This document shows, one piece after another, positions 9,853 through 60,094 of a DNA stretch of 64,000 nt (positions within the stretch are counted from its first letter, which is position 1; every line of letters begins with the position of its first letter). The stretch spans positions 248,001 to 312,000 of IMG/VR virus record IMGVR_UViG_3300021964_000012; one strand, 5' to 3'. Below the pieces are notes generated by a model. The model was not told the origin of the DNA, searched no databases, and worked only from the letters and a program-made list of their open reading frames with translations. The position numbers and the translations under genes were made by a program.

Positions 9853-11982
9853 TTAACCTTTTGCGAGGTAAAGAATTCTTTCAAGCATTGGATCACGTTC
9901 TGCTTTGAGTGCTTCTTTGCCAGTGTCGATATCTTGTATTTCTGTCGTCACATGCTTCTTTTCAACAACCTGTCCACTAAGCCTACGCATATCTGACATT
10001 TGAGCATCTTCTATTATACCACCTAATGCTTTGATTCCTTTTTCGGCGAATTGTATAACCTCAGCTGGTTCTGCGTCGACTAAATCTCTGGCCATTTTAT
10101 ACACGTCTAATGTTACATCGTCGGCATTTGCATGCATGTCCTTAAAGTAGTCGCCCATTTCATCTAAGATATGATCATTGTCGGTAAAGTCATTTGTAGA
10201 CGCTTGGTCGTATAAGTGATTAAGGTCGCTAATCAATTCTCTTTTAAGTTCATCTGCACTCATGTAGTCGGTATCGTCTTCAGTCATGTCTTCGGAATCC
10301 AAATCGTCCTGGGCCATCATGTCAACTGGTTTTTCGTTGTCAGTTCCATCTTGGTCGTTTGGATTGACAAAACTGTCCATGCCCTCATATTGAGGTGCAA
10401 CTCTATCCATATAGTCAATCCGTACCCATTCAGCCAGATCATATTCTTCATGTAGTGCATCATAGTCTTCTTCAGCAACTGGTGTACCGTCGGTATACTT
10501 TATGCCATCTTCAAGAACAAAAATTAAATCATCAAAGTCCTGCATATCATATTCGATAGTGTCTTGGTCTATTTCTTTGCCTTTGAAAATAATTTTATCG
10601 CTGTAGCCTTCTTCAATGTCTGAACCACCAGCAGTTTTCACTACATCTTGTCCGCCCATGCCCATTTCTAAACTGCGTTGCTTGCCTGCGGCTGCATTGG
10701 CCTGTCCTTGTTCATATCCACTTGCTGGTTCTTCTTGTGTAGGTGATTCACTTACGTTAACATCTATGTCAACACCAAGTTCCTGAGCACGTGCCTTTAC
10801 TAATTCTCTACAATCTGCATCTGGATCTTTGTCTGCTAGTTCACCAATGTCATCAAACAAACTGTCATCGCCAATCAAGTCATAAAGTTGTTCTGAAGCA
10901 TACTCGCCATCAGGTCCACATGGTAGAGGCTTTGACATAAGCTCTTGTAGCCTTGCCATGTCTTCTGCAGTTTCTGGCAATGCCCATGTACCTTCCATTA
11001 TTTGGTCGGTCCAGTTTTCAAATTGGTTTGCTTCTTTCATTGTGCTTTCCTTTATTTTTGCTAGTATAGGCAATGCTTCTTCGATACGGCTATCAACTGC
11101 ACTGTTTACAAATACTTCTCTTACACTTTCGATTGTTTCGTCTAATTCTGTTGCTACTGCTGGATCATATGTGGCAAATATTTCTTTGTATCCACGTTTG
11201 CCAATCATCTTCTTGGCTTTGCGTTTTAGATCTGCATAATGCTTTACTGCATCTTCTACTATGCCCAATGCTTGTTCGTTTTGTGCAAATGCATTACTGC
11301 GACTTGCTCTTACAAACTTTCCTAGTGTTTTTATTTCATTTATGGTTTCGCTAATGTACTGTCCAAATGCATCATATGGTGTACCGCCTTCGCTTACGTG
11401 ACGTGCCATTGCTTTAGCACCAGCAATACTTTCAAAAGGCATGCGAAATCTTTCACCTTGTGCATTTTCAACAAATAGTGCCGCAATGTTTCTGAAGCGT
11501 TGCTCACCTTCACCAATAGCTCGTGAATGTTGTATCACTACTTTTGCTTTGCCTGGCTGGTTGCTATAGCTCTTGCTTTTACCTTGAGCTTTCCATGCTT
11601 CCATAATAAGGCTTTCGCTTATGTCTGCCATGCTGGCCATTTGATACTTCAGTTTGTTCATGTTGTTCAAACTGAATGTAAGCAGGTTGCGTTTTGCAGT
11701 TTGTCTAAGCATTGCAAGAAAATCATACCAGTCACCTTTATCGCCAGGATCCATACCTTTGCCTAAGTTGTCACCATAGTAGACTTCTAAGTCATTGTCT
11801 CCATTTATTAATACTACAACTGTTCCGTATTCATTTCCGTTAACAGAAAAATTGAAACTAAACAAATCCGCTTCTCTCGGATTTACTGTAGGTTTACCCA
11901 TTGAATCCAAGCTCTTAGGATCTAAGTCTCTAGTAACTAACAAATCATAAATTTGTTGTGATGCTGTGTTTTCTTGTGCCAT
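9853..11982 (-). CDS. Large acidic protein, probable internal head/core protein
   Basis: 709 aa, D/E-rich C-terminal half, late motif 5 nt before ATG, directly downstream of terminase. Confidence 0.55.
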   Translation of the reverse strand: MAQENTASQQIYDLLVTRDLDPKSLDSMGKPTVNPREADLFSFNFSVNGNEYGTVVVLINGDNDLEVYYGDNLGKGMDPGDKGDWYDFLAMLRQTAKRNLLTFSLNNMNKLKYQMASMADISESLIMEAWKAQGKSKSYSNQPGKAKVVIQHSRAIGEGEQRFRNIAALFVENAQGERFRMPFESIAGAKAMARHVSEGGTPYDAFGQYISETINEIKTLGKFVRASRSNAFAQNEQALGIVEDAVKHYADLKRKAKKMIGKRGYKEIFATYDPAVATELDETIESVREVFVNSAVDSRIEEALPILAKIKESTMKEANQFENWTDQIMEGTWALPETAEDMARLQELMSKPLPCGPDGEYASEQLYDLIGDDSLFDDIGELADKDPDADCRELVKARAQELGVDIDVNVSESPTQEEPASGYEQGQANAAAGKQRSLEMGMGGQDVVKTAGGSDIEEGYSDKIIFKGKEIDQDTIEYDMQDFDDLIFVLEDGIKYTDGTPVAEEDYDALHEEYDLAEWVRIDYMDRVAPQYEGMDSFVNPNDQDGTDNEKPVDMMAQDDLDSEDMTEDDTDYMSADELKRELISDLNHLYDQASTNDFTDNDHILDEMGDYFKDMHANADDVTLDVYKMARDLVDAEPAEVIQFAEKGIKALGGIIEDAQMSDMRRLSGQVVEKKHVTTEIQDIDTGKEALKAERDPMLERILYLAKG

Positions 11983-11987
11983 GTACG

Positions 11988-11994
11988 TATTTAT
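11988..11994 (-). promoter_or_regulatory. Late promoter ATAAATA, 5 nt before ATG
   Basis: T4 gp55-type TATAAATA-like motif overlapping the terL stop codon. Confidence 0.6.
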
Positions 11995-13571
11995 TAAAAC
12001 ATTGCCACAAACGGCATAGGTTCTAATGTTTCCTCGCTAAAATCTGTAAGGTGTGAATCAAGTTCTTTGTGATAACTTGTAAGAACCTGGAGCATACGAA
12101 TCGCCAGAAGCGTACTCATCACTAAATCATCAGTCTCGCCAGGCTTGCCAGCATAACTTGTACCGTGAGCAACAAAGTTCTTCAATTCTCCAATCAAACT
12201 AGGAGAGCTTATTGTCATCTTGTTTGTTTCAACCAGTGTTTTTAACTTGGCACAGGCTGCAATTTTACTTTTGTTTGTGGTATTAAAACCTTTACGATAT
12301 CTTCTTCCGCTTGCACTTACTACACTGCTGTCGCTGAGAAAGTATCCTTCAATGTTTTGTTCTCCGTACTGTTCGATGCACAACAAAGCGGCCTCGCCTA
12401 TTGTATTGTTTTCAACACTATAATAAACGCTTTGTGGCTCTTGCACAGTAGAATTTATTTCTTTGACTATTTCAACCATAATTCTAATTTGTTCTGTGAT
12501 TGGCGTTCTGTTGTGTCTCCATTCTGCAACTTGTGTAGTTGAGTTTGCTTCGTAAACTTGTATAGCACTAGGGTCTCCGCCTGTACCAAGACTAGGATCT
12601 AGTGCAACTACATATATTTTACCTTTCTGCGGACGTTTATACCAACGTACCTGTCCAGTTTTGTATAATGGTTCAAGTAAACCTTCCAGATCAATTAATT
12701 TTGTCGGAGATATAAGTGTTTCGTCTGATATAATAAATTCACAGTCCATCTCTCGTCGAAAACGTTCAATCCCAAGTATGTTACGTTGTTCAGTTGCCCA
12801 ATCTTCGTCTCTGTCAGGATGCTCTCGCCAGTATGCTCTATATGCCTTAAAACCATTGATGCCAAGTTCTTTAGTATTTCCAAATTCGTCTTCAGTTTTA
12901 TTAGCACCTTTCCATATAAATGCAAATTGATCCTCATCACTGTTTGGAGTACTGGTAATAATCGCACCACCACCTGTTGACAATGTAGGCGATATACTAG
13001 TCCAAAATTCTCTGGCGATAGTTGGTCTTACAAATGCAAACTCATCGCAATATAACAAGGTTATACTCATACCTCGTCCTGTGTTTTCAGTTGTGGTTTG
13101 TGCTACTATTCTACTTCCATTATCAAATTCTATTGAGCCCTTGTTATAACTGGTTACACCTGCACGTATATGATCAGGACATGCTTCATAGCTGTATCTT
13201 ACACGTTGCATGATTTCTTGGGCACCTGCATATTTGTGTGCCGCAACCAATATTGTACTATCAGGTTTGAACATTGCATACCATAAGAGATATCCAGCCG
13301 CACTTGTGCTTTTACCAGTTTGTCTAGGCATCATTGATATGCTGAATCTATAGTTGTGATATGTGCTTATTAAACGTTCTTGAAACTCCCAGGGATCGTA
13401 CTGCAACTTTCCTTGTACAGGATGTTGAATAAAGAAAAAGTTACGCATAAAGTACTCTGGGCCAGTTTCTGGATCAGCACAACGCATAAACTCGTCTAGT
13501 TGTTGTTCAGTGAATTCTTGTTTTTTATAAGGAGTTTTTACTAATACCCCATCTTCTTGTCTTGCTACCAT
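11994..13571 (-). CDS. gp17: Terminase large subunit, T4 gp17-like
   Basis: MPRQTGKS Walker A, LLYCDEFAFV Walker B, ITSTPN motif, nuclease acidic residues ALDPSLG and TDDLVMS. Confidence 0.95.
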   Translation of the reverse strand: MVARQEDGVLVKTPYKKQEFTEQQLDEFMRCADPETGPEYFMRNFFFIQHPVQGKLQYDPWEFQERLISTYHNYRFSISMMPRQTGKSTSAAGYLLWYAMFKPDSTILVAAHKYAGAQEIMQRVRYSYEACPDHIRAGVTSYNKGSIEFDNGSRIVAQTTTENTGRGMSITLLYCDEFAFVRPTIAREFWTSISPTLSTGGGAIITSTPNSDEDQFAFIWKGANKTEDEFGNTKELGINGFKAYRAYWREHPDRDEDWATEQRNILGIERFRREMDCEFIISDETLISPTKLIDLEGLLEPLYKTGQVRWYKRPQKGKIYVVALDPSLGTGGDPSAIQVYEANSTTQVAEWRHNRTPITEQIRIMVEIVKEINSTVQEPQSVYYSVENNTIGEAALLCIEQYGEQNIEGYFLSDSSVVSASGRRYRKGFNTTNKSKIAACAKLKTLVETNKMTISSPSLIGELKNFVAHGTSYAGKPGETDDLVMSTLLAIRMLQVLTSYHKELDSHLTDFSEETLEPMPFVAMF

Positions 13572-13576
13572 ACTAG

Positions 13577-13583
13577 TACTTAT
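13577..13583 (-). promoter_or_regulatory. Late promoter ATAAGTA, 5 nt before the terL ATG
   Basis: Same 5-nt spacing as four other sites. Confidence 0.55.
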
Positions 13584-14782
13584 AGTGCTCGGGCAATCTC
13601 AGGCCACAGTTTTTCAAACTGTCCTTTTTGATCAGGATGCCATTCTGTTTCTAATTTTTCTGTAAATTCAATAAATTCTTTACTGCGTGTAAGATTATCT
13701 GGCGGCAAAAGTTCTTTTATACCATGAGAAGTAGCTTCACCTGTATTACCTTTTATAAGTTGTTGTTCGATTCCAGATAAAAAGTCCAATTCACGATTTG
13801 TAGAAGGTCTGTTTGATCCAACATGTAGTTTTCGGTATCTATGTATTTCGTCAATTGCCAATTGTCTTATTTGGTCGTTGTGTTGACTAGGGTCAAGGTG
13901 ATCGCCCCATACAACCTGCCAAGTAATAGATAAGTTATGTTTAAGTGCATATTCTTTTAGTTCGCAAACTTTTGTGCAGTTGTATATATTATAAACTGCA
14001 TGTATTCCTCCGCCATGTGAAGAGTTTTTTATTTTGTTTGCAACAGTGGTAATATTTTTGTCCATTTGTTTCCAAGAACTACCCCACCTGACGTATTCAA
14101 ATCTTTCTCCGATGTTATCGAAACTCATACTCCAACTGACATTATCTCTTGCAAGTAACTTTTTTGGTACTGGAAATCGATCAAAATCTACAGTGCAATT
14201 TGTTATTAGTGTCACTTGGACGTCTGAAGGCAAGATATCTAAAAGTCTATCATTTTCCTTCATCATTAACGGTTCACCGCCTACCATTGCGACTTCTCTT
14301 ACAAAATCTTTGTGTTTGCTGATATAATCAATTACTTGTTGCTCTTGCTTGTTGATTGTATGACTATTACCTTGTCCGATTATACTTGCCCATTTAGTAC
14401 TAAAAACTGAACTACAATAGGTACATGCTAAATTGCAAGTATTATTCCAGCGTACATCAATCAATGCGGGTTTGTGTTCATCAAGACTGGCATTTGCAAC
14501 ATCAAAATCTTCGCTTACATTGTTGTGCCAATGTCTTTCGCTTTCGCCTGTAATGTTTTCTCGGCGTATACAACCGTCGCAGTATTTTTCGTGCAATACT
14601 CCGTTACGTATTGACTTTTTTATTTCTTTAAGAGTATCGCTTTGTAAAATTGATTCAATTGATCCATCATCATGCTTTCCTAGCATGTTTGGATTAGCGG
14701 CACAACAGGTTTTTATTTGTCCTTCAAAATTTAAATGCAGACTACGCCATGGGGCTGCACAATACTTTTTCTCTTGTTCCAT
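13580..14782 (-). CDS. Radical SAM protein with N-terminal SPASM/Twitch-like region
   Basis: CNLACTYC and VGGEPLM; N-terminal CAAPW...GQIKTCC...CDGC. Confidence 0.85.
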   Translation of the reverse strand: MEQEKKYCAAPWRSLHLNFEGQIKTCCAANPNMLGKHDDGSIESILQSDTLKEIKKSIRNGVLHEKYCDGCIRRENITGESERHWHNNVSEDFDVANASLDEHKPALIDVRWNNTCNLACTYCSSVFSTKWASIIGQGNSHTINKQEQQVIDYISKHKDFVREVAMVGGEPLMMKENDRLLDILPSDVQVTLITNCTVDFDRFPVPKKLLARDNVSWSMSFDNIGERFEYVRWGSSWKQMDKNITTVANKIKNSSHGGGIHAVYNIYNCTKVCELKEYALKHNLSITWQVVWGDHLDPSQHNDQIRQLAIDEIHRYRKLHVGSNRPSTNRELDFLSGIEQQLIKGNTGEATSHGIKELLPPDNLTRSKEFIEFTEKLETEWHPDQKGQFEKLWPEIARAL

Positions 14783-14787
14783 ACCAT

Positions 14788-14794
14788 TACTTAT
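14788..14794 (-). promoter_or_regulatory. Late promoter ATAAGTA, 5 nt before ATG
   Basis: Overlaps the stop of the 45-aa ORF. Confidence 0.55.
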
Positions 14795-14928
14795 ATGGAC
14801 TTTGGAGAACGGTTTTTTATTTTGTTATTTGATTTTGGTTGTAGATACTCAGCTGGTAAAGGAGCAACCTTGGGTGTTGGCTTTGGTTTTGGTTTTTCAA
14901 GTCCGCCAAAATTTATGCCTGTAATCAT
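14791..14928 (-). CDS. Unannotated 45-aa Lys/Pro-rich peptide
   Basis: MITGINFGGLEKPKPKPTPKVAPLPAEYLQPKSNNKIKNRSPKSI; ATGA overlap with the SNase stop; fills the gap up to the radical SAM gene. Confidence 0.55.
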   Translation of the reverse strand: MITGINFGGLEKPKPKPTPKVAPLPAEYLQPKSNNKIKNRSPKSI

Positions 14929-15365
14929 GTTACTACGCCATCTTCAAGCAACTTAACTCGATTGGCTAGGTGTGCTTTTTGTACGTCTTCTTTGTTCTGT
15001 CCATGATAAGGTACTGCGTGTCCTTCGCTTACAAGAATTTCAGTAAGCATACGCCATGTATCTGTAGCACCGTCGTACACACTAAAGTCGCCTAAGATAC
15101 GTCCAAACTTGCCTTTCATATCTTCGCCGTTTTTGTTTATTTGTGTTTTGAGAACGCAGGTTTTCCCTAGTAGTTGTTTTACTCTTGCTTTGGCGGCAAG
15201 CCCAAACTTTTTTTCTTCTTTGTCTCTTGTTCTTGATTCTGGTGTGTCTATGCCCATTATACGAACACGCTCATCTGATAGCACTATGCCAAATCCTAAG
15301 TCGATATCTACATCAACTGTGTCACCATCTACAACTTTTATTACTGTTGCTCTATACTCATACAT
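14925..15365 (-). CDS. Staphylococcal nuclease (SNase/thermonuclease)-like protein
   Basis: VVDGDTV, RVRIMGIDTPE, GKFGRILG catalytic motifs; no signal peptide. Confidence 0.85.
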   Translation of the reverse strand: MYEYRATVIKVVDGDTVDVDIDLGFGIVLSDERVRIMGIDTPESRTRDKEEKKFGLAAKARVKQLLGKTCVLKTQINKNGEDMKGKFGRILGDFSVYDGATDTWRMLTEILVSEGHAVPYHGQNKEDVQKAHLANRVKLLEDGVVT

Positions 15366-15371
15366 ATTATG

Positions 15372-15393
15372 CTCCTGTTATAGGAGTATTTAT
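15372..15393 (-). promoter_or_regulatory. Late promoter with an SD-sequestering mini-hairpin
   Basis: ATAAATA-CTCCT-ATAAC-AGGAG-CATAAT-ATG; CTCCT can pair with the AGGAG Shine-Dalgarno. Confidence 0.5.
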
Positions 15394-15399
15394 TAAGTA

Positions 15400-16230
15400 T
15401 TATAAATCCCACTTGTTAGCAAAGTATGTTTCAAGACCAGATATTTCGCTTGCTGTCAGAGTTCTACTATAAAAAACCAGTTCAGCAACAAATCCTGTAA
15501 ACTGATTTCCAAGTTCTTCTTGATAATCACTGCCAACAATAAAACTGTTACAGATGCCGCCAAATGCAGAAGGTACTGGATCAGTATAGGTAAGTGGAAC
15601 ATCACTTTCATCTAGTCTAAATTTCAATCGGTCAGAATCAGTTGCGCCGGTGCCATCAAAAATGATTGATTGTATATGATAGCTGCTGTCTGTTCCAACA
15701 GGTGTAGTTGGTGTAGCACTCATTGCACCTACTTGGCCAGTCATCATGTACAATTCATATTCATTGGCTGCATTTTTACCGTAGCCCATATCACCACAGT
15801 CGGATTGTGCTTGTGTTTCAATAACTCCGCTACTACCGTTGCTAAATCTACTAACAATAAACATACTAGCACCAGTGAGATTTTGTAACCATGTTGCTGG
15901 ATTACTGCTACACGCATCCGAGCCATCAAATTCCAATGCACCAAGGCTGTTAAGTTGATTAGTTCTGTAGTTTGGTCTTCCTCCTGGGCCGCCAACAACA
16001 GGGTTCAAGTTGTGTGCATACGCCGAAAGGTCGTTCCATTGTGTTATACCGTCGCCATCACTGGGATTTGTAGGCTGAAAGTATTCATTGGTTGCAGCAT
16101 CATACCAAATTTCAAGCACCAATGGAGCGTCAGGAACAATATCTCCAGGATTTGGTTCAGCTGGTGCTCCAGGTGAGTATGAGTTGTTAAGCACTCCTAG
16201 GCCCCGGGACTTAAAGACCCGATTAACCAT
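15400..16230 (-). CDS. Putative virion protein with LamG/concanavalin-like beta-sandwich
   Basis: WYDA...WNDLS...LEFDG...GFVAELVFYSRTLT..E...L..KW pattern. Confidence 0.6.
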   Translation of the reverse strand: MVNRVFKSRGLGVLNNSYSPGAPAEPNPGDIVPDAPLVLEIWYDAATNEYFQPTNPSDGDGITQWNDLSAYAHNLNPVVGGPGGRPNYRTNQLNSLGALEFDGSDACSSNPATWLQNLTGASMFIVSRFSNGSSGVIETQAQSDCGDMGYGKNAANEYELYMMTGQVGAMSATPTTPVGTDSSYHIQSIIFDGTGATDSDRLKFRLDESDVPLTYTDPVPSAFGGICNSFIVGSDYQEELGNQFTGFVAELVFYSRTLTASEISGLETYFANKWDL

Positions 16231-16529: not shown

Positions 16530-16557
16530 TTTTTCCCCTCAACGTATTTATGGTGAA

Positions 16558-18702: not shown

Positions 18703-19923
18703 TTACCATTTGCGACAGGACCAATAACGTGCTTTCGTCTTTGGTCCTGGATTATCGCAGTTGTGCCTAGCTCTAAAACTCTTACGTGCTTTAGGATTGT
18801 TTTTTCTTATACGCATTGATTTGCCCTTGACGCTGGTTCCGCCGTGACCAAAGTTCACTTTTTTCACATTACCTGTTTTTGGATCTTTCACATATACTTT
18901 AAACTTTTTGACATCACCTTGCATAGGCTTATTAAGTTCAACTTTACGTCCTTGATATTCTGCTTCTGCTATATCTGCTTCAACTACACGCTTCAAACTT
19001 CTAATAGTGTCGTTAACCATTGCACTGATATCGCTTGATCCTATCTCGTCATCGTCATCGCCATGGAATTCAGCAGTATCTCTAATTGCTTGTGTAATTT
19101 GCTCGATACCATACTGTCTAACCATGTCTGAGAACTCAGGATGATTCATAATCCTGCGTGTAATCATTGCTTCTACATCTTCAACATCTTCGATGAGTTT
19201 TTCAGTTTGTTCAACTGCTTCTGTAAGTTTGCGTGTGTAATATTCAGCACTTGATGGTATGCCCATACGTTTGTAAAGATCTGCTTGCTCTTCGAACATT
19301 TTTATATCGCTTGCAAGTTTTTGTATTTGTTTACAATTACAATGTGGACACTTCGCACCACAAGTACAGTCCATTACCTTAACACCACAACAAGCATCAG
19401 GACAGTATATTTTACCATCTTTAATACGTTCTAGTAGTGTGCCTTCATTTGTAATAGCACGATACTGGCTTTTACTGCTTTCCTTTACTCTAGCTTCTGC
19501 AATTCTAAAACCATCATGTGTAATGCCAGTTTTATTTGTTAGATAGTCTGCAATAAATTCTTCTGTATCTTCATCGTCTAGTCCAACTGGAACAGGAACT
19601 GTCATAGTTGTACTTAAATCACTTACATCATCTTCAGCGTCCCATTTGATATTAGTTACTTTAACTATGCCTTCGTCTAGTTCTTCTGAAGGTGGATCAA
19701 TAACTCCATCTGTGTCGTCACCCACATAGTTACAGTCTTCTAGTATACCATACGCATATTCATCTAAATGTAGTGTAATACTATCATCACTGTGTTCAAC
19801 TACAGGAAAGTCTATAGCAATTTCGTCATCAAAATCTTCTCTAACAACAACTTCAAGCACATCACCTGTAATAGGAAATGCAACTGCTCTTTCACTTTCT
19901 GGTATGTACTTTTTTAAACTCAT
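18703..19923 (-). CDS. Acidic multidomain protein with Cys-rich insert and basic C-terminal domain (DUF6321-like, from memory)
   Basis: CPDACCGVKVMDCTCGAKCPHCNC; C-terminal KKFKVYVKDPKTGNVKKVNFG...SFRARHNC...YWSCRKW. Confidence 0.6.
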   Translation of the reverse strand: MSLKKYIPESERAVAFPITGDVLEVVVREDFDDEIAIDFPVVEHSDDSITLHLDEYAYGILEDCNYVGDDTDGVIDPPSEELDEGIVKVTNIKWDAEDDVSDLSTTMTVPVPVGLDDEDTEEFIADYLTNKTGITHDGFRIAEARVKESSKSQYRAITNEGTLLERIKDGKIYCPDACCGVKVMDCTCGAKCPHCNCKQIQKLASDIKMFEEQADLYKRMGIPSSAEYYTRKLTEAVEQTEKLIEDVEDVEAMITRRIMNHPEFSDMVRQYGIEQITQAIRDTAEFHGDDDDEIGSSDISAMVNDTIRSLKRVVEADIAEAEYQGRKVELNKPMQGDVKKFKVYVKDPKTGNVKKVNFGHGGTSVKGKSMRIRKNNPKARKSFRARHNCDNPGPKTKARYWSCRKW

Positions 19924-28805: not shown

Positions 28806-28872
28806 TATTTATAAGAATATCAATTTTCTTGCCTGATATACTGCCCTTTGCAAAGGTTTACATTGCTAAATA
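28806..28872. promoter_or_regulatory. Divergent late promoters with a central 12-bp palindrome
   Basis: ATAAATA on minus (28812..28806) for the sheath; CTAAATA on plus (28866..28872) 5 nt before ATG 28878; CCTTTGCAAAGG at 28845..28856. Confidence 0.55.
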
Positions 28873-28877
28873 CCCGT

Positions 28878-29222
28878 ATGAATAGACCTATTTGTAGTGC
28901 TTGTAACCGTCGATTAGTCGCAGTTAACTATATCAAAGAAAACAAAACGCACTATCGCACAAGATGTGACAGTTGTATTAGACGAAAAAGAAAGGCTCAG
29001 CCAATAACTCCTCGTTGGATGAGAAATGGTTTTAAGAAAAAAACAAATTGCGATAGATGTGGCTTCTATGCAAAAAGCGGAGCACAGATTTTGGTATTTC
29101 ATATGGATGGAGATTTGAATAACTGTGACTTAACAAATCTAAGGAATGTCTGTTTAAACTGTAGTGTTGAGATTACAAAACTAGAACTACCTTGGCGTAT
29201 TGGAGATTTGGTCGAGGACTAG
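28878..29222 (+). CDS. Zn-binding HNH-like protein (start revised to ATG 28878)
   Basis: CSAC...CDSC; CDRCGF...FHMDGDLNN...NL..VCLNC; last His of HNH replaced. Confidence 0.65.
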   Translation: MNRPICSACNRRLVAVNYIKENKTHYRTRCDSCIRRKRKAQPITPRWMRNGFKKKTNCDRCGFYAKSGAQILVFHMDGDLNNCDLTNLRNVCLNCSVEITKLELPWRIGDLVED

Positions 29223-29810
29223 ACTTTTTAAATCATCTACGGTACTATCATTGTGTAAGATAGTATCAAATCTAGTATTCACATCAATCCATTTGTACTC
29301 ACTTTCGTGTACATCAATACCACTCATTAGATTGCTTGTTTTAGGATTATTATTATCAAAAATAGCTCTGGCAAACCACTCAGGATCTTTGCCTCTTTTT
29401 ACTTGCCAAATTTTGCCGCCAAGTTTGCGTATCATATTTTGCTCGTTACGAAAACGCACATCAGGCACTATATAATCTCCTGGATGGTCTATCAAATATT
29501 TTTTTAAAAGACTTACCCATACGCCATTGTAAAACCCGTCTCGCATACATTCAGTACCAAATTCTTGTAGCACTATACGAGGTGTAATTGTTCTGCCTGT
29601 TTCAGCAGTCCAAAATTCGTCTGCTTGTTCACGCCACTGACGACTTTCTTCGGTATCGCCTTCCAGCATTGCTCTATCCCAGCCAAAGATAGTGGCTACA
29701 CCATCTTTTAGTTTATCAGCAAAACTAATTTTTTTGTATCCTTGCTCTACCAGTATATCAGCAACTGTTCCTTTGCCAGAACCAATTAATCCGCATATTC
29801 CTATTATCAT
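29187..29810 (-). CDS. gp1: Deoxynucleoside monophosphate kinase, T4 gp1-like
   Basis: GICGLIGSGKGTVA P-loop, SFADKLK, PRIVLQEFGTE, VPDVRFRNE, HESE. Confidence 0.9.
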   Translation of the reverse strand: MIIGICGLIGSGKGTVADILVEQGYKKISFADKLKDGVATIFGWDRAMLEGDTEESRQWREQADEFWTAETGRTITPRIVLQEFGTECMRDGFYNGVWVSLLKKYLIDHPGDYIVPDVRFRNEQNMIRKLGGKIWQVKRGKDPEWFARAIFDNNNPKTSNLMSGIDVHESEYKWIDVNTRFDTILHNDSTVDDLKSLVLDQISNTPR

Positions 29811-30328
29811 TTAAGTCCAGTAACTTTTAGATGTTTTATTGTTTGTTGTAGCAAATCTATTTGTCTTCTACAATCTTCGAGTGCATGATGACTTGCACGT
29901 GGCTTCGGCAAATCTGGGTACAAACTATATACAGTTCGTGCATCTCTGACATTCCAAAATTGCCACGGTATAGGCAAGCCTAATTGTTTCATTGCGTTTT
30001 CTAGTATAACCATATCAAATGTTGTACCATTTGCCCATGTGAGATTGCAGTGAAAACATATCTTGCTTAGTTCTTCTAATGCCTGTTTTAGTGGTATTCT
30101 ACCTTCTTCTGAGAATGCTTCATTTTGTGCTTCTTGTGGCTGAGTTGCCCACCATTCTACTGTGGCATCATCAACTTCTCTGTCAGGTTGACTGTCAACA
30201 TCAACTCTTGCATAGTAATCTTGTTTATGGTAACCTATACTGAAAGGATCAAAGGTTTGTGCGGCTATTGTAAGAATACAAGCATCTGGACCTGTACCTA
30301 CAGTTTCTATATCAATCATAATATCCAT
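29807..30328 (-). CDS. DEDDh 3'-5' exonuclease (Rv2179c-like)
   Basis: IMIDIETVG, WANGTTFDMVIL, RDART, HHALEDC. Confidence 0.85.
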   Translation of the reverse strand: MDIMIDIETVGTGPDACILTIAAQTFDPFSIGYHKQDYYARVDVDSQPDREVDDATVEWWATQPQEAQNEAFSEEGRIPLKQALEELSKICFHCNLTWANGTTFDMVILENAMKQLGLPIPWQFWNVRDARTVYSLYPDLPKPRASHHALEDCRRQIDLLQQTIKHLKVTGLK

Positions 30329-30334: not shown

Positions 30335-30362
30335 ATTATAACAGTGAATGAAACTATGTCAA
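30335..30362 (-). promoter_or_regulatory. Consensus sigma70 promoter giving a leaderless mRNA
   Basis: TTGACA-N16-TATAAT with extended TGn; 6 nt to ATG 30328, no SD. Confidence 0.75.
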
Positions 30363-40518: not shown

Positions 40519-40567
40519 TATTTATCTGGATTTTTGATCAAAAAAATAGCACCCAAAGGTGCTATTT
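40519..40567 (-). terminator. Terminator plus late promoter cassette, copy 1
   Basis: AAATAGCACC-TTTG-GGTGCTATTTTTTT (40567..40540) then ATAAATA (40525..40519). Confidence 0.8.
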
Positions 40568-53288: not shown

Positions 53289-53307
53289 GGTAGTTAAAAA
53301 GTATCTA

Positions 53308-54119: not shown

Positions 54120-54139
54120 AATAAAGTTTTCAGTGTATA

Positions 54140-55342: not shown

Positions 55343-55361
55343 TAAATGTCTCCTTTTTTAG

Positions 55362-56444
55362 TTAAAGCCCTGCTAGGCGTTTCAAGGCAATGACGTTTGA
55401 ATCGTCATCTGCTTTATCGACAACCTTTGCAGTTTTATTACCAGTTTGTTCAGTTAAACTTGCAGCCTTTTTAGTTGCTTTGGTTTCGCTCAACACTGCT
55501 GGCAAATATTTTTCAAAAGCGTTCTTCAATCGAGATGTCTGAACGTTTTCAAGTAAGTTAGTCATAATTTCTCTCTTCTCATCATTGAGAGGAGATAGAA
55601 GCTCGTCCAATGTAGCATCACGCTCATTGGCTTCTTTTATAACTTTGATTTCGTTATTTTTGCTTTCAACAAGTGCTTTCGCCTTGTCTTTAACAGCAAT
55701 GGCTTCTGCCAACTGTTTATCTTTTTCTACAATAGTTGCATTAAGTTTACGTACTTCTTCATTTTCATTTAAATGTGTAGCACCAAACTCAGTTGCATAT
55801 GCTTCGAAGATTCGACGACCAAAATTGTTCTCACGAGCAATTTTAATGTCTTCTTTAAGTTGACCCATTTCAGCCTTAAGATGCGTAGATACAGTTGAAG
55901 CCATCTTCTTAGCAGATTCTTTTATGAACTTGCTCTTTAGATTATCAAGTTTATTGCGTGCTTGTGAAACAAGTCTTACTTTAGTTTCCACTAAGTCTTT
56001 CTTGTCAGCAGCAAATTCTTTGATTTCTTCAGCTAAAGCACCAACAACAAATTTTTCTAATTTTTCAAAACCTGTTTTTGATACCTTACGATCTGTGCGT
56101 AGTTCTTTTAACTCTTCTGAAAGTTGTTTAACTAAAAAGCCGTTAAACTTATCAGCATTTTCTTTCATCTTGTTATGAAACTTAACACGATCTTCAGCTA
56201 ATGCTTTCTTCTCTTCGTTAAGAGCTGATATTTCATTAGCTAAGCCTTCTGTAACCATTTTATCTAGGGCTTCTACCATCACAGTTTTGTCATGCTCATA
56301 GCGTTGTGCAAACTCCTCACGAAGTTCAGCACGCACTGTCTCTTTGGCCTCGACCATTTTTGCTTCCCATTGTTCAGCAATAGCAGTACGAGTGTCCTCA
56401 TTGACGAGATCGCTATCTAATAGTGGTTTAATAGCATCTAACAT
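55362..56444 (-). CDS. gp22: Prohead core scaffold, gp22-like
   Basis: Coiled-coil 360-aa protein between protease and capsid genes; ends ALKRLAGL. Confidence 0.85.
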   Translation of the reverse strand: MLDAIKPLLDSDLVNEDTRTAIAEQWEAKMVEAKETVRAELREEFAQRYEHDKTVMVEALDKMVTEGLANEISALNEEKKALAEDRVKFHNKMKENADKFNGFLVKQLSEELKELRTDRKVSKTGFEKLEKFVVGALAEEIKEFAADKKDLVETKVRLVSQARNKLDNLKSKFIKESAKKMASTVSTHLKAEMGQLKEDIKIARENNFGRRIFEAYATEFGATHLNENEEVRKLNATIVEKDKQLAEAIAVKDKAKALVESKNNEIKVIKEANERDATLDELLSPLNDEKREIMTNLLENVQTSRLKNAFEKYLPAVLSETKATKKAASLTEQTGNKTAKVVDKADDDSNVIALKRLAGL

Positions 56445-56453
56445 GCGATTCTC

Positions 56454-57080
56454 CTAAATTTTTAGGTCTCTGATAAGACGAGAAACTTCGTCTTTCAGGT
56501 ACTTTTGTATTTTGCCGTCTTTCCCAGACTCACGAGCCATTTCTAAAATGTGATGCCCATGTTTCATGTTCATCAGTCCTTCATAAATTGCTTTTGGATA
56601 AGCATTTGGAGCACTGGGTTGTGCGACCACGTCTACAGTGACTATTTCAAAGTCACTGACACGTCCGTTATGTGGATCAACGTTACCTGATCCACGACTC
56701 GAGACGCCCAATCTCACACCGGATTGCAACATTGTTTTAACTAGTTGCCCCATTGGAGTTGGGAGAATTTTTAGTTTTCCATAACCATTAGGTCCGTCCA
56801 TCCACATGCGTTCAATCATGTGACATACACGGTCTAAATTAATCTTAAGGTCATCTGGATGATCTACTTCGCCAAGAACGCTTGTTGTTTTAATTTGTTC
56901 ATTCAGTGTATCAACTGCTTCTGCAATTTGACTCACTGGATAGATACGTTCATTGGCATTTTTCACGTCACCTTGTATGCAGATGCCTTCCATATAGAGG
57001 TCCTTACCATCTTTGCCTTCAACAATGTTGATTTTTGCGGCTTCAAAAGTAAGTTCCTCTTTAAGGTATAGCTGTCCCAT
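56454..57080 (-). CDS. gp21: Prohead protease, gp21-like
   Basis: KNANERIYP, GEVDHP (catalytic His), GVSSRGSG (catalytic Ser). Confidence 0.93.
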   Translation of the reverse strand: MGQLYLKEELTFEAAKINIVEGKDGKDLYMEGICIQGDVKNANERIYPVSQIAEAVDTLNEQIKTTSVLGEVDHPDDLKINLDRVCHMIERMWMDGPNGYGKLKILPTPMGQLVKTMLQSGVRLGVSSRGSGNVDPHNGRVSDFEIVTVDVVAQPSAPNAYPKAIYEGLMNMKHGHHILEMARESGKDGKIQKYLKDEVSRLIRDLKI

Positions 57081-57101
57081 GTACGTGATTCCTAGTCTAG
57101 A

Positions 57102-58010
57102 TTAGTCTATAACACTTTTGGTGTTAACACCAGAAGCTTGTGATAATTCAGGCTTTGGAGCTGGTTTTACATCTGGCTTTGTAGTTCCATCCATGTCACC
57201 ATATTTTGGTGTTGAACGACCTGATGTGTTTCCATCTTTGATGTCGACTGGCTTTGCATCCATTCCTTTTTGACCTGAGTTAGCAGCTACTGGACTTTTA
57301 CTAGCTGGTGATGTTGTAACTGGCTTAGGAGCTGCAACTAATTCTACACCTTCTTCTAAACCTTCTACTTCAACATTAACATCGATTGGCTCGTCCATTT
57401 TGTCTTCCATGCCATCAATCTCGTCCTGCTCCATGTCAGTATCGCTATCAATGTCTGAAATCTCGTCTTGCTCGCCTTCAATGTCGTCTGTGTTATCGTC
57501 AACCTGTGCCATTAGCTCTTCGAATTCACCCATTAGTTCGTCTAATTTGTCTTCGATGTCTACTACACGGTCTTCTAATTCTTCTTCGCCGTCATCGTCA
57601 TCAACGTCTACGTCGATCATTTCGATTTCTTCTTCCTCATCTTCCATTCTGACGCCTTCTTCTTCGGCCTCAACTTCGTCAATGAGATCGTCAACCTGTG
57701 ATCCACCTAAATCTGTTTCATCAATCTTTTGATCGTTGTCATGTTCTGCGTCACGCTTGCCACGCTTTCCCATTTCGTCGTCTCTACGATCTTTCATTGA
57801 TTGTTTTTTGCCTGATTCAGCACCGTCTTTAGCACCTAAATGCTCATCTTCGCGGTCCTTGTAACCTTGCTTTTCTGTAATTTCTTCTTCTGACATAATG
57901 TCTTCGTATATGTCTTTTGACTTTTCCACAACAATCTCATGGAAAAGAGCTTTTGCATTTTTTTCATCATCGTTGATGACGAATTCAATAAGTTGCTCAA
58001 ATTTGTTCAT
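57102..58010 (-). CDS. Very acidic prohead core protein (gp67/gp68-like position)
   Basis: D/E-dominated; between portal and protease; GTAAGTA at 58052..58046. Confidence 0.65.
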   Translation of the reverse strand: MNKFEQLIEFVINDDEKNAKALFHEIVVEKSKDIYEDIMSEEEITEKQGYKDREDEHLGAKDGAESGKKQSMKDRRDDEMGKRGKRDAEHDNDQKIDETDLGGSQVDDLIDEVEAEEEGVRMEDEEEEIEMIDVDVDDDDGEEELEDRVVDIEDKLDELMGEFEELMAQVDDNTDDIEGEQDEISDIDSDTDMEQDEIDGMEDKMDEPIDVNVEVEGLEEGVELVAAPKPVTTSPASKSPVAANSGQKGMDAKPVDIKDGNTSGRSTPKYGDMDGTTKPDVKPAPKPELSQASGVNTKSVID

Positions 58011-58121
58011 TAAAATAATCCTTCTAAGTATTGGGCTCAGTATAGTACTTACAAGAAAATTAAAAAACTAGTAGTTTATAGGGGTAAAAGTGGTAGAAAA
58101 TGAATTATTTTCTGTGCTAAC

Positions 58122-58337
58122 CTACATCTGTGGTGGAGGTGGAGCAAATTGTGCTTGAATACGTTTGAGATCTTGCTTCTTCTCATAGTTTCTAAGATCG
58201 TACATTCTACGCAGTTTAGATATCTGCTTTAGTGTTAGTTTTGTTTTACGCAACTCGCCAAGTTCCGGAACAGAGTTATCGTCTTTCTGTTCTTGATATC
58301 CGTCTGCTGGTGCATCATAAAATTCAAATAGTTTCAT
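58122..58337 (-). CDS. Small head-associated protein
   Basis: 71 aa, starts MKLFEFY; ATAAATA (58349..58343) 5 nt before ATG. Confidence 0.65.
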   Translation of the reverse strand: MKLFEFYDAPADGYQEQKDDNSVPELGELRKTKLTLKQISKLRRMYDLRNYEKKQDLKRIQAQFAPPPPQM

Positions 58338-58345
58338 AATAGTAT

Positions 58346-60094
58346 TTATGCAGGAGGTTCTTCAGGAGCGGCTGGTGCAGCCATGTCAACATTTACATCA
58401 ACTTCTTCGCCACCTGCAGCTTCTTCACCAGCAACTGCATCTCCCATCTGTACATCACCTTCAAAGTCGCCAGGGCTTACACCTACTGTACGTAAATCAC
58501 TACCAGTTGGTTCAGTTTCAATTGGTTGTCCCGTTTCTTCTTCCCAATACTCAGTATTTTCTTGAAGTTCATCGTCGGTTAATCCAAGGTAGCGTTTCAG
58601 AAGAAAACGCTTGCTCATGTAGGGCAGTTGTTCCAATGCACTGAATGCTTGTATTCTAGTTGTGTCTAGTTCGGCCTGTCTATAGCTCGCAAAATTCTGT
58701 GGAGGTGCAAATGTAATGTTAAAAAGTCCACTGTCAATGTTGAACCCTCTCCAACGCATGAACATTTTGAATTCATCATCAAGTTTTTCAATTACCTGCT
58801 TTTGCAATCTTTCGCAGTATTGATTGAATCTGTATTCTTGTATGAGTGCAGTACCAACTCTACCGTCGTTCATTGGTCGATCTGAGTCATCTGGACCGGT
58901 TGGTAGATAACTGCTAGGAACACGCAAGCCTCTGCACATTTTGTTGTTAAAGTATTTTAAATCGTCAATCTGTCCAAGGTTTTCACCACCCGGCAGTGTT
59001 TCAACTTTTGATCCACGTCCTTCGGCAGTTTGAGGAAAGAAATAGTCTTCGTTTATGCTCAATGGATTGTAAGTTGTATCCATGGTTGTTGCTTGTTGAC
59101 CACCCTGTGGATTTGGGATACGTCTTTGATGTACTTCATTTTTCACACGTTCGACAAACTGCATGGCTAGATGTGATGGCATGTTTCCAACATCAATGTA
59201 AAATACACGTCTTTCAGGAGCACGTTGTACTCTGTATATAAGAATAGCATCTTCAAGCAATTCTTTTTGTTTGAACACTTTGAATATCATTTCCAGCACA
59301 CTCTGCGAGAAAGGCCAGAAAAAATCTAATCCTTCACTGAGTCCAAGATGCACTACATTTTTAGCATCAATTACGGTTTCATTTACTGTGTGTTCGAATC
59401 TGCTTTGTCCAGCAGGAGCATTTGGAATGGTATAGTTTGAACCACCCATGGCACTGCCACCAGTTCCAATTATTTCGCCTGAGTTTAATCCAGTGCCATA
59501 GTCGGTGGTTTTCTTTGGTGCAATACTGAGATTTTGAAAGTTTGGATTTATATCTCTAATCACATACTGCTCAGGACGTTTGCCTTCATTTTCATTAACA
59601 ATCACACGCACAACCTTGGTCATGTCAACCCAGTATAGTTCAAATGTTTCTGGATCACGCACAAACACTTGATCGCCGTACTTTATAGTGTTCCTAAAAA
59701 TACGAAACATACGCTGATCAAGTTTATTAAGTTTTGTCCACTGTTGTAGTTGTGTACGTATTATTTCAATTTCATTATTTGTTGGTTTATCAGTGTATTG
59801 CACTTCAAATGGAGTATTATTGCTTTCATTCTTTTGTGTTGCAAACTCTGCTATAATGTCCAAACAAGCATTGATTTCACTGTCAGTATCCATGTTTTCA
59901 TACTGATTGTAGCGTTCTATCCTGTTAGGATGACCAGAGTATACTTCTGGTAGATGACTTTGATAGTTTTTAAAACCAAACTGTCCGCCAGAACCACCAC
60001 TACCATAAGCAGGACCCCTTGCGTTTTGTCCACTTATAGGACTCAGTTGACCACCGGTGCTACCAACTGCTTTGAAGTATTTTTTCCAGGACAT
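58346..60094 (-). CDS. gp20: Portal protein, gp20-like
   Basis: LEDAILIYRVQRAPERRVFYIDVGNMP, EDYFFPQ..GRGSKVETLPGG, LRVPSSYL. Confidence 0.96.
   Translation of the reverse strand: MSWKKYFKAVGSTGGQLSPISGQNARGPAYGSGGSGGQFGFKNYQSHLPEVYSGHPNRIERYNQYENMDTDSEINACLDIIAEFATQKNESNNTPFEVQYTDKPTNNEIEIIRTQLQQWTKLNKLDQRMFRIFRNTIKYGDQVFVRDPETFELYWVDMTKVVRVIVNENEGKRPEQYVIRDINPNFQNLSIAPKKTTDYGTGLNSGEIIGTGGSAMGGSNYTIPNAPAGQSRFEHTVNETVIDAKNVVHLGLSEGLDFFWPFSQSVLEMIFKVFKQKELLEDAILIYRVQRAPERRVFYIDVGNMPSHLAMQFVERVKNEVHQRRIPNPQGGQQATTMDTTYNPLSINEDYFFPQTAEGRGSKVETLPGGENLGQIDDLKYFNNKMCRGLRVPSSYLPTGPDDSDRPMNDGRVGTALIQEYRFNQYCERLQKQVIEKLDDEFKMFMRWRGFNIDSGLFNITFAPPQNFASYRQAELDTTRIQAFSALEQLPYMSKRFLLKRYLGLTDDELQENTEYWEEETGQPIETEPTGSDLRTVGVSPGDFEGDVQMGDAVAGEEAAGGEEVDVNVDMAAPAAPEEPPA

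What the first reader, a model, noticed from the sequence alone, without database searches (positions are those of the whole stretch)
11982..58349. Late promoter motif exactly 5 nt before ATG at five genes: systematic leaderless late mRNAs, including terminase
Seen: (A/C)TAA(A/G)TA-N5-ATG with no SD at 11988 (709-aa gene), 13577 (terL), 14788 (radical SAM), 28866 (HNH-like) and 58343 (71-aa gene). The sigma70 promoter at 30335..30362 is likewise 6 nt from its ATG. Four of the five motifs reuse the upstream gene's TAA stop. Established: T4 TATAAATA spans about -13 to -6, which puts +1 on the A of ATG. Inference: leaderless translation is routine here, unlike T4, hinting at a host that translates leaderless RNA well, or a way to keep these proteins at low level.
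Basis: partly seen in the sequence, partly recalled or inferred. Interest (0 to 1): 0.6.

Follow-up and report, generated by a model that had tools for sequence, protein, structure and literature searches.

The report
Late promoters abutting start codons
In this uncultured 328-kb marine jumbo phage and its relatives, a T4-like late promoter box sits exactly 5 bases before the start codon of a fixed set of genes that lack a ribosome-binding site. This points to messenger RNAs that begin at their own AUG, which T4 and the cultured relatives checked here do not show.

Summary
All five motif-N5-ATG sites and the sigma-70 promoter 6 nt before an ATG are at the stated coordinates.

Evidence from the whole 328,292-bp phage genome:
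- TAA(A/G)TA-N5-ATG marks 16 gene starts, against about 1.6 per other spacing. Fifteen of the 16 lack a Shine-Dalgarno (SD) sequence.
- Spacings of 9-14 nt are almost empty. Spacings of 15-36 nt hold the ordinary leadered late promoters with an SD.
- The base before the ATG is a pyrimidine in 16 of 16, as expected at a transcription start. It is a pyrimidine in 41% of other genes.
- The phage encodes a gp55-family late sigma factor.

Evidence from other genomes:
- Two distant relatives show the same short-spacing class. T4 and GAP32 do not, and PA5oct has at most three cases.
- The arrangement is conserved gene by gene. It is found at 52 of 65 distinct portal-to-small-gene junctions, at 24 of 51 terL starts, and at nearly every junction after terL.
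- The five spacer bases vary freely while the box and the spacing stay fixed.

Best reading: gp55-type late promoters placed so that +1 is the A of AUG, giving leaderless late mRNAs for about 6% of genes. No 5'-end data could be obtained, so the transcription start is inferred, not shown. The host and the low-expression idea remain untested. I rate this a new variant of a known kind.

The parts
11988..11994 (-). Late-promoter box ATAAATA, 5 nt (CGTAC) before the ATG at 11982 of the 709-aa virion protein gene. The terL stop lies directly 5' of it.
   Evidence: The same junction in nearly all terL relatives has TAAATA-N4..7-ATG without an SD.
9853..11982 (-). 709-aa gene (virion structural protein, phrog_13484) with no SD; predicted leaderless.
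13577..13583 (-). Late-promoter box variant ATAAGTA, 5 nt (CTAGT) before the terL ATG at 13571. Its TAA is the radical SAM gene's stop.
   Evidence: 24 of 51 distinct terL upstream contexts in relatives keep TAARTA at N5, and 11 have an SD instead.
11994..13571 (-). Large terminase gene (525 aa), no SD; predicted leaderless.
14788..14794 (-). Late-promoter box variant ATAAGTA, 5 nt (ATGGT) before the radical SAM ATG at 14782. Its TAA ends a 45-aa ORF (14791..14928).
13580..14782 (-). Radical SAM/SPASM gene (400 aa), no SD; predicted leaderless.
28866..28872 (+). Box CTAAATA, 5 nt (CCCGT) before the ATG at 28878 of a lone + strand gene, in a region divergent from the tail-sheath gene.
   Evidence: Orthologues in two distant relatives also have the box at N5.
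28878..29222 (+). 114-aa gene of unknown function. HNH is not supported. It is conserved in relatives (54-58% identity).
58343..58349 (-). Late-promoter box ATAAATA, 5 nt (CTATT) before the ATG at 58337 of the 71-aa gene. Its TAA is the portal gene's stop.
   Evidence: 52 of 65 distinct portal junctions in relatives have TAAATA-N5-ATG.
58122..58337 (-). 71-aa gene (phrog_13986, unknown function) directly after the portal gene; predicted leaderless.
30335..30362 (-). Consensus sigma-70-type promoter (TTGACA, 16 nt, TATAAT) whose -10 element ends 6 nt before the ATG at 30328 of a 3'-5' exonuclease gene (29807..30328). Predicted leaderless early or host-type transcript.
   Evidence: Three more such promoters lie elsewhere in the genome, and none has its -10 element 10-18 nt from a start.
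15387..15393 (-). Comparator: leadered late promoter ATAAATA, 21 nt before the ATG of the 146-aa endonuclease gene, with an AGGAG SD in the leader.
28806..28812 (-). Comparator: leadered late promoter ATAAATA, 36 nt before the tail-sheath ATG (28769), SD present.
60125..60131 (-). Comparator: leadered late promoter ATAAATA, 30 nt before the portal ATG (60094).
40519..40525 (-). Comparator: leadered late promoter ATAAATA, 21 nt before the ATG of the 912-aa gene, SD present. Further ones lie at 16545, 25394, 31551, 33873(+), 46531, 51273, 54079 and 62700.
19603..19616 (-). Sixth TAAGTA-N5-ATG match in the window. It lies inside the 406-aa gene (18703..19923), 318 nt below its longest start. Probably chance or an internal start; not counted.

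Best explanation
The motif is the phage's late promoter, a T4-type TATA box with core (A)TAA(A/G)TA. It is read by host RNA polymerase carrying the phage's gp55-family sigma factor.

The motif occurs in two architectures. In the common one it lies 15-36 nt before the ATG, and the leader carries an AGGAG Shine-Dalgarno sequence. In the second it lies exactly 5 nt before the ATG, occasionally 4-8 nt. With the T4 register (box at -13 to -6), that spacing puts +1 on the A of AUG. The transcript then has no leader and no SD, and must be translated through its 5'-terminal AUG.

The second class covers 16-26 genes in this genome. In the window they are terL, the virion protein gene after terL, a radical SAM gene, the small gene after portal and a 114-aa gene. 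A few sigma-70-type promoters are laid out the same way.

Shown: the motif, its spacing statistics, the missing SD, the pyrimidine at -1, the sigma gene, and conservation across relatives.
Inferred: that transcription starts on the A, that these RNAs are the translated species, and the late timing.
For: Motif identity:
- ATAAATA is the most enriched 7-mer upstream of ORFs (36 of 54 copies).
- All 14 copies in the window lie just upstream of called gene starts on the sense strand.
- The genome encodes a gp55-family late sigma (T4 gp55 match E 1.5e-5; phrog_12791, E 1.3e-73).

Spacing and sequence features:
- Gene-anchored spacing is bimodal. There are 16 starts at N5, 15 of them without an SD. 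N9-14 is nearly empty. About 50 starts lie at N15-36, mostly with an SD.
- The base at -1 is a pyrimidine in 16/16 (this genome), 13/13 and 8/9 (two relatives), against 41-52% in other genes. Fisher P is 1.6e-6 to 8e-4. That is the usual Y(-1)R(+1) start-site preference of bacterial RNA polymerase (my knowledge).
- In leadered promoters the 6th base after the box is A in 20/31 and 17/26. This is the same register.
- The T4 box spans -13 to -6 (PMC2988020).

Conservation:
- Box and spacing are fixed while the spacer varies. Portal junction: 52/65 at N5. terL start: columns -11, -10, -9, -7 and -6 are invariant and -8 is G in 83%, against 33-67% in the upstream flank. Nearly every junction after terL has the arrangement.
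- 8 of 10 short-spacing genes with an orthologue in a 316-kb relative are short-spacing there too.

Against translational coupling:
- Six of the 26 genes sit at strand switches. No other promoter-like element lies within 120 nt.
- In only about 5 of 16 is the motif's TAA the stop of an upstream gene.

Other promoters and other genomes:
- Sigma-70-type promoters show the same two-class layout: 4 at 5-6 nt, none at 10-18 nt.
- T4 and GAP32 have 1 and 0 gene starts at N5 under the same procedure. Their leadered peaks are recovered.
Against: - No transcript 5' end was observed. The only RNA data were assembled metatranscriptome contigs, which cannot show starts.
- One 100%-identical contig (13391-13652) runs across the terL start. 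So read-through RNA, or carried-over DNA, also exists.
- The short-spacing class uses a looser box than the leadered class. Half have G at -8, and -12 varies. TAAGTA is barely enriched at leadered distances. These could therefore be weaker promoters or a somewhat different signal.
- No homologue of T4 gp45 was found with the T4 query.
- Raw motif-N5-ATG counts are only about 2 sd above Markov-shuffled genomes.
- Gene calls are my own longest-ORF calls, not curated.
Confidence: 0.7

Rival explanations
1. The box is a real late promoter, but the leaderless transcript is not what gets translated. These genes would be translated from longer read-through polycistronic RNAs by termination-reinitiation. 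The promoter sits against the ATG only because the genome is tightly packed and the box supplies a TAA stop.
For: - In the window, 3-4 of the 5 boxes overlap or abut the upstream gene's stop.
- Most gene junctions in this genome are overlaps or gaps of 0-2 nt, so coupling is common.
- An RNA-library contig spans the terL start.
Against: - Packing alone does not predict an exact 5-nt spacing, an empty 9-14 nt zone, or a pyrimidine at -1 in 16/16.
- 10-11 of the 16 boxes do not carry an upstream gene's stop.
- Six of the 26 short-spacing genes have their upstream neighbour on the other strand.
- The spacing is held at 5 nt in 52 of 65 diverged portal junctions.
Confidence: 0.13
2. TAA(A/G)TA-N5-ATG is a translation signal rather than a promoter. 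It would be an AU-rich element at fixed distance that replaces the SD on ordinary leadered mRNAs, for example by binding ribosomal protein S1 or a phage factor.
For: - Fixed distance to the start codon and absence of an SD.
- The TAAGTA variant is enriched almost only at N5 and not at leadered distances.
- In some lineages the terL box is replaced by an SD at the same place.
Against: - The core equals the box found 15-36 nt upstream of SD-bearing genes, and matches the T4 late promoter.
- The enrichment of C and T at -1 is opposite to the A-rich context of other starts.
- Lone genes at strand switches need a promoter, and no other is seen.
- Sigma-70 -10 hexamers show the same abutting layout.
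Confidence: 0.08
3. The motif marks an RNA processing site. An endonuclease would cut AU-rich sequence there, creating 5' ends near the AUG after transcription, or the site serves some other RNA-level function.
For: The T4 review warns that some mapped late 5' ends could be processing products (PMC2988020). The motif is AU-rich.
Against: - A gp55-family sigma is encoded, and the motif matches its known target.
- Genes at strand switches still need a promoter.
- No data here point to cleavage.
Confidence: 0.05
4. Chance: AT-rich junctions with TAA stops happen to resemble the late box.
For: The window-only excess is modest (6 against 2.25). Raw genome counts are only about 2 sd above Markov expectation.
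Against: - Conditional and gene-anchored histograms give P 3e-7 and 2e-11.
- TAAGTA and TAAATA rank first and second among 75 letter permutations at N5.
- The pattern is replicated in two independent genomes and conserved in hundreds of relatives.
Confidence: 0.01

Closest known systems
T4 late promoters (TATAAATA, gp55/gp33/gp45-dependent)
   Same: The same AT-rich box with no -35 element. A gp55-family sigma is encoded. The box often overlaps the upstream gene's stop. It lies upstream of structural and packaging genes.
   Different: - In T4 the box lies about 21-29 nt before the ATG with an SD between them. Only 1 T4 gene start has it at N5.
- Here the first T of the 8-mer is not conserved, and G at -8 is accepted.
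- The sigma is 307 aa against 185 aa in T4.
- No gp45 match was found with the T4 query.
Predicted ATAAATA late promoters of RaK2-like jumbo phages (CBB, GAP32)
   Same: The same motif and a gp55-like sigma without recognisable gp33 or gp45 (PMC5259590). The terminases are related (42-43% identity).
   Different: GAP32 has no gene start with the box at 4-8 nt. All its cases are leadered, peaking at 28-36 nt. PA5oct, the closest cultured relative (53% terL identity), has at most 3.
Thermus phage phiYS40 leaderless middle and late transcripts
   Same: A large phage whose later genes are largely expressed from leaderless mRNAs, with a -10-like element just upstream of the start codon (as summarised in PMC3594737).
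   Different: - phiYS40 uses the host sigma-A holoenzyme in a host phylum where leaderless genes are common.
- Most of its middle and late genes are leaderless. Here it is roughly a third of late-box genes.
- A shift in host IF2 and IF3 levels was reported there. Nothing of that kind could be tested here, and no phage IF3 or S21 gene was found.
'-10 region adjacent to ORF' leaderless genes of Deinococcus-Thermus, and GeneMarkS-2-type leaderless classes
   Same: A promoter -10 element a few bp before the ORF drives leaderless expression, and its distance to the start codon matters (PMC12340547).
   Different: That is a cellular housekeeping sigma and a chromosome-wide habit. Here it is a phage-specific sigma and a conserved subset of phage genes.
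Other jumbo phages with mapped transcription starts (phiKZ, AR9)
   Same: Large genomes with their own promoter classes.
   Different: No leaderless transcripts were found in phiKZ (PMC8244752). AR9 5' UTRs are 26-491 nt long (PMC5312081).

Membership tests
T4-type (gp55-dependent) late promoter | Short AT-rich TATA box (TATAAATA-like) as the only conserved element, strongly enriched just upstream of genes | tested here: met
   ATAAATA is the top 7-mer, with 36 of 54 copies within 60 nt upstream on the sense strand. All 14 window copies lie just upstream of called gene starts. No conserved -35 element was seen by eye in the listed contexts.
T4-type (gp55-dependent) late promoter | Phage encodes a gp55-family sigma factor | tested here: met
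   Genome 319713-320639(-): T4 gp55 match E 1.5e-5; phrog_12791 'sigma factor for late transcription' E 1.3e-73 and phrog_234 E 1e-23.
T4-type (gp55-dependent) late promoter | Box lies at -13 to -6 of a mapped primary 5' end | not testable with these tools
   Only assembled metatranscriptome contigs were available. There is indirect support: A at the 6th base after the box in 65% of leadered cases and a pyrimidine at -1 in N5 cases.
T4-type (gp55-dependent) late promoter | Activation through a sliding clamp (gp45) and co-activator (gp33) | tested here: inconclusive
   The T4 gp45 query found nothing in the genome. gp33 was not searched. The same gap is reported for CBB (PMC5259590). A divergent clamp cannot be excluded.
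Leaderless mRNA gene | Promoter -10 element ends 5-7 nt before the start codon | tested here: met
   16 gene starts with the box at N5, plus 10 at N4, N7 or N8. Four sigma-70 -10 hexamers lie at 5-6 nt.
Leaderless mRNA gene | No Shine-Dalgarno sequence | tested here: met
   15 of 16 N5 genes lack even a 4-nt SD core at -18 to -4, while most leadered genes have one.
Leaderless mRNA gene | Primary transcript 5' end at, or within a few nt of, the start codon | not testable with these tools
   Read laying returned contigs only, and no start or end pile-ups are possible with them.
Leaderless mRNA gene | AUG start codon (GUG and UUG work poorly without a leader) | not tested
   The search pattern required ATG, so this holds by construction. 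GTG and TTG counts at N5 are at background without reference to genes.
Translational coupling / termination-reinitiation junction | Start codon within a few nt of the stop of an upstream gene on the same strand | tested here: not met
   This holds for about 5-6 of 16 N5 genes only. Six of 26 have the upstream neighbour on the opposite strand, and several have gaps of 78-206 nt.
phiYS40-like global leaderless late programme | Most middle and late genes leaderless, with a change in host initiation factors | tested here: not met
   Only about a third of late-box genes are in the short-spacing class. No phage IF3 or S21 gene was found. Host factor levels are not testable.

The most novel reading that the evidence does not exclude
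An uncultured clade of marine and estuarine jumbo phages runs a two-tier late programme. The same gp55-type promoter makes either SD-led or strictly leaderless mRNAs. Membership of the leaderless tier is fixed gene by gene (terL, the gene after terL, the gene after portal, a baseplate wedge protein and others) across genomes whose orthologous proteins are only 26-74% identical. That would imply a dedicated translational control layer late in infection, for example a shift of host ribosomes or initiation factors that tunes the two tiers differently. It would not be mere tolerance of leaderless RNA.
Probability: 0.25. Interest if true: 0.75.

Novelty: new variant of a known kind. Interest (0 to 1): 0.55.

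Why it matters
T4-type late transcription and leaderless translation are each well known. Their systematic, conserved combination has not been described in the papers I could search. T4, GAP32, phiKZ and AR9 show no leaderless class.

If confirmed, it would matter in four ways:
- It gives a simple sequence rule (box-N5-ATG, pyrimidine at -1, no SD) for correct start-codon calling in a large family of uncultured jumbo phages.
- It marks a defined gene set, including the terminase, whose dosage may be set at the translation step.
- It gives a clue to host biology for phages with no known host.
- It offers a natural system for asking how a phage balances SD-led and leaderless initiation.

Tried and rejected
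- **RNA evidence.** One run search found the phage in estuary, marine and salt-marsh samples, including five RNA libraries. Read laying returned only Logan contigs, so no 5' ends could be read. It shows that RNA-library contigs cover parts of the region and that one spans the terL start, nothing more.
- **Near-identical isolates.** megablast against the phage collection found none.
- **Host.** The terL scan of species genomes hit only MAG contigs labelled Lishizhenia, Haliscomenobacter, Rickettsiales and Gammaproteobacteria. I take these as mis-binned phage contigs. The phage's consensus TTGACA/TATAAT promoters and AGGAG SD argue against a Bacteroidota host (my knowledge), so the host stays unknown.
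- **Phage-encoded translation modifiers.** No S21 (PF01165) and no IF3_C (PF00707) were found.
- **Function of the short-spacing genes.** PHROGs gave mostly nothing. Hits were a baseplate wedge protein, a second radical SAM protein, a ParB-like protein, a phosphoesterase and virion proteins. No functional theme could be established.
- **'HNH-like' label.** It is not supported.
- **A preferred 8-nt gap as the explanation.** Rejected. Gaps of 8 nt are not favoured, and four of the six such junctions are TAGGA-type stop-plus-SD junctions.
- **T4's small bump at N5 in the annotation-free histogram** (15 of 311). It dissolves on inspection, because almost none of those are gene starts.
- **Not used.** The large protein searches, structure prediction and complex prediction, because the question did not need them.
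- **Not held.** The phiYS40 primary paper. I cite it through a review.

Full report
**What the window is.** The window is bases 248,001-312,000 of a 328,292-bp IMG/VR phage genome. The genome has 105-bp direct terminal repeats and 37.5% G+C, and most genes are on the minus strand. The large terminase is 53% identical to that of Pseudomonas phage PA5oct. It is 42-52% identical to those of Atu_ph07, a Vibrio jumbo phage and the RaK2-like phages GAP32 and CBB. The window carries terL, portal, tail sheath, a gp32-like ssDNA-binding protein, a radical SAM gene and nucleases. No near-identical isolate exists in the phage collection. The sequence recurs in estuary, marine and salt-marsh data sets.

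**The observation.** All five sites are exactly as described:
- ATAAATA-CGTAC-ATG at 11994..11980(-), the 709-aa virion protein gene.
- ATAAGTA-CTAGT-ATG at 13583..13569(-), terL.
- ATAAGTA-ATGGT-ATG at 14794..14780(-), radical SAM.
- CTAAATA-CCCGT-ATG at 28866..28880(+), 114 aa.
- ATAAATA-CTATT-ATG at 58349..58335(-), 71 aa.

None has an SD sequence. The sigma-70 promoter is a consensus TTGACA, 16 nt, TATAAT, ending 6 nt before the ATG at 30328 of a 3'-5' exonuclease gene.

The motif's TAA is the stop of the radical SAM gene and of the portal gene. It also ends a 45-aa ORF that overlaps the endonuclease stop by ATGA. At 11988 it follows the terL stop directly, as a tandem stop. So 'four of five' is roughly right. 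'HNH-like' is not supported.

**Is it more than chance?** In the window alone the excess is modest: 6 matches against 2.25 +/- 1.15, reached by 1 of 100 shuffles. The whole genome settles it.
- ATAAATA is the most enriched 7-mer in the 60 nt upstream of ORFs (36 of 54 copies). It is, if anything, depleted elsewhere: the window holds 14 copies against 19 expected, and all 14 lie just upstream of called gene starts on the sense strand.
- Without any annotation, 24 of 372 TAARTA copies are followed by ATG at exactly N5, against a mean of 6.9 at other spacings (P 3e-7). TAAGTA and TAAATA rank first and second of 75 letter permutations.
- Anchored on gene starts, 16 genes have the box at N5. Counts are 4, 0, 3 and 3 at N4, N6, N7 and N8. 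N9-14 is almost empty. About 50 genes lie at N15-36, and most of those have an SD, whereas 15 of the 16 N5 genes do not (P 2e-11).
- A caveat: raw counts against first-order Markov genomes are only about 2 sd high (24 against 15.9 +/- 3.8). The depletion of ATAAATA in the window suggests the real genome is poor in the motif itself, but the Markov expectation for TAARTA was not counted.

**Why I read it as a promoter that starts on the A of AUG.**
1. The genome encodes a gp55-family late sigma factor. It matches T4 gp55 at E 1.5e-5 and phrog_12791 at E 1.3e-73. In related phages (CBB, GAP32) the same ATAAATA box is already predicted as the late promoter (PMC5259590).
2. In T4 the first T of the box is at -13, so the box spans -13 to -6 (PMC2988020). 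A 5-nt spacer therefore puts +1 on the A of ATG.
3. The base before the ATG is a pyrimidine in 16 of 16 N5 genes here. In two relatives it is 13/13 and 8/9. In all other genes it is 41-52%, with A preferred (Fisher P 1.6e-6, 2.5e-5, 8e-4). Pyrimidine at -1 with purine at +1 is the usual start-site preference of bacterial RNA polymerase (my knowledge). It is the opposite of what an AU-rich translation enhancer would predict.
4. In leadered promoters the 6th base after the box is A in 20/31 and 17/26, which is the same register.
5. The empty zone at 9-14 nt is what one expects if a leader must either be absent or be long enough to hold an SD.
6. Six of the 26 short-spacing genes have their upstream neighbour on the opposite strand, some only 2-29 nt away. 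No other promoter-like element lies within 120 nt. These genes cannot be coupled to an upstream gene and need a promoter just there. The window's 114-aa gene is one of them.
7. Sigma-70-type promoters in the same genome show the same two classes. Four have the -10 hexamer 5-6 nt from the ATG, none has it at 10-18 nt, and the rest lie at 19-58 nt with an SD.

**Conservation.** More than 590 IMG/VR contigs encode a related terL, and as many a related portal.
- Among 51 distinct terL upstream contexts (terL identity 69-100%), 24 keep TAARTA at N5 and 3 at N4. Columns -11, -10, -9, -7 and -6 are invariant and -8 is G in 83%, while the upstream flank is 33-67% conserved. In 11 contexts an SD stands there instead.
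- The junction after terL has TAAATA 4-7 nt before the next ATG, without an SD, in nearly every relative.
- Of 65 distinct portal-to-small-gene junctions (portal identity down to 67%), 52 read TAAATA-N5-ATG, 4 have N4, 3 have N7 and 1 has N8. The five spacer bases differ freely, but the last one is C or T in all but one case. In most junctions the third base of the portal's last sense codon is A, completing ATAAATA (by eye).
- Two large relatives were analysed whole (316 kb at 47% G+C; 342 kb at 41% G+C; terL 72-74% identical). They show the same class: 13 genes at N5 in the first, and 7, 9, 5 and 5 genes at N4-N7 in the second, almost all without an SD.
- Of 10 short-spacing genes here with an orthologue in the first relative, 8 are short-spacing there too. 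Switches between the leadered and leaderless classes are rare.

**Contrast with cultured phages.** Under the same procedure T4 has 1 gene start at N5, and its known leadered late promoters are recovered at about 21-29 nt. GAP32 has none at N4-8, and its leadered peak is at 28-36 nt. PA5oct has at most 3. T4's small annotation-free bump at N5 consists of non-genes. phiKZ has no leaderless transcripts (PMC8244752), and AR9 5' UTRs are 26-491 nt (PMC5312081). The closest precedent for a phage with many leaderless later genes is Thermus phage phiYS40 (via PMC3594737). The closest cellular precedent is the '-10 adjacent to ORF' habit of Deinococcus-Thermus (PMC12340547).

**What is not shown.**
- No RNA 5' end was seen. 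The only RNA data were assembled contigs. One 100%-identical contig crosses the terL start, so read-through RNA, or DNA carry-over, also exists.
- The short-spacing boxes are looser than the leadered ones, which are mostly (C/G)ATAAATAC(T). Half have G at -8, and TAAGTA is hardly enriched at leadered distances. They may be weaker promoters, which would fit low-dosage products such as terminase, or a slightly different signal.
- The host is unknown.
- No phage S21 or IF3 gene was found.
- Most short-spacing genes have no annotated function.
The presence of leaderless-type sigma-70 promoters suggests that the unmodified host machinery can already use such RNAs (inference).

**Verdict.** The feature is real, statistically solid at genome and clade level, and best explained as gp55-type late promoters set to produce leaderless mRNAs for a conserved subset of genes (confidence about 0.7). 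It is a new variant of known things rather than a new kind of system. Its value lies in the clean sequence rule, the deep conservation and the contrast with T4.

Noticed in passing
window 32884(-) and 32918(+); also genome 51763, 54016, 156486, 159701, 175192, 179014, 239195: About ten sigma-70-type promoters are followed directly after the -10 element by a conserved leader element (roughly GTATATACAGTTAGAAA) and then an AGGAG SD. AGTTAGA is itself among the most enriched upstream 7-mers. It may be a regulatory or stability element of early transcripts, or part of a middle-promoter signal.
   Followed up: partly
genome-wide junctions; window examples at about 55350 and 8540: Many gene junctions use a TAG stop fused to the next gene's SD (TAGGAG or TAGGA, 8-9 nt before the ATG). 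Junctions overall are dominated by ATGA (-4) and TAATG-type (-1) overlaps.
   Followed up: partly
genome 319713-320639(-), outside the window: The gp55-family late sigma is 307 aa, against 185 aa in T4. The gp55-like part matches only residues 190-289. The N-terminal 190 residues are shared only with jumbo-phage homologues (phrog_12791). No match to T4 gp45 was found in the genome.
   Followed up: partly
window 14791-14928(-): A 45-aa proline- and lysine-rich ORF overlaps the endonuclease stop by ATGA and ends in the TAA of the radical SAM promoter box. It is probably a real small gene that longest-ORF calling misses.
   Followed up: partly
positions -2 and -1 of short-spacing genes, e.g. window 11983-11984 and 13572-13573: Besides the pyrimidine at -1, G at -2 is enriched in the short-spacing class: 10/26 against 12% in other genes. 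At terL starts of relatives it is 88%. This is unexplained and may reflect a start-site context preference of the late holoenzyme.
   Followed up: no
L162-L166 (species-genome contigs): terL relatives (58-76% identity) lie on contigs binned into MAGs labelled Lishizhenia, Haliscomenobacter (a 183-kb contig), Rickettsiales and Gammaproteobacteria. These are most likely phage contigs mis-binned into MAGs, so they are not reliable host evidence.
   Followed up: no
window 9800-15400 in RNA runs X15-X18: Metatranscriptome assemblies from salt-marsh and marine samples hold contigs 90-100% identical to parts of this region, deepest over the endonuclease gene (15036-15400). The phage or close relatives are present in RNA libraries, but the strand, the ends and DNA carry-over cannot be judged.
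   Followed up: partly
genome 60928-61884(-) and 61903-63340: A second radical SAM gene (318 aa) also has a late-type box (CTAAGTA) 4 nt before its ATG. Next to it lie the genome's only three tRNA genes (Thr-TGT, Trp-CCA, Arg-ACG).
   Followed up: no
terL starts in relatives (L043, L046, L048, L053, L065, L075): In some lineages the terL box-N5-ATG is replaced by an ordinary GGAG or AAGGA SD at the same place. This is a natural swap between leaderless-type and SD-led initiation at one orthologous gene.
   Followed up: partly
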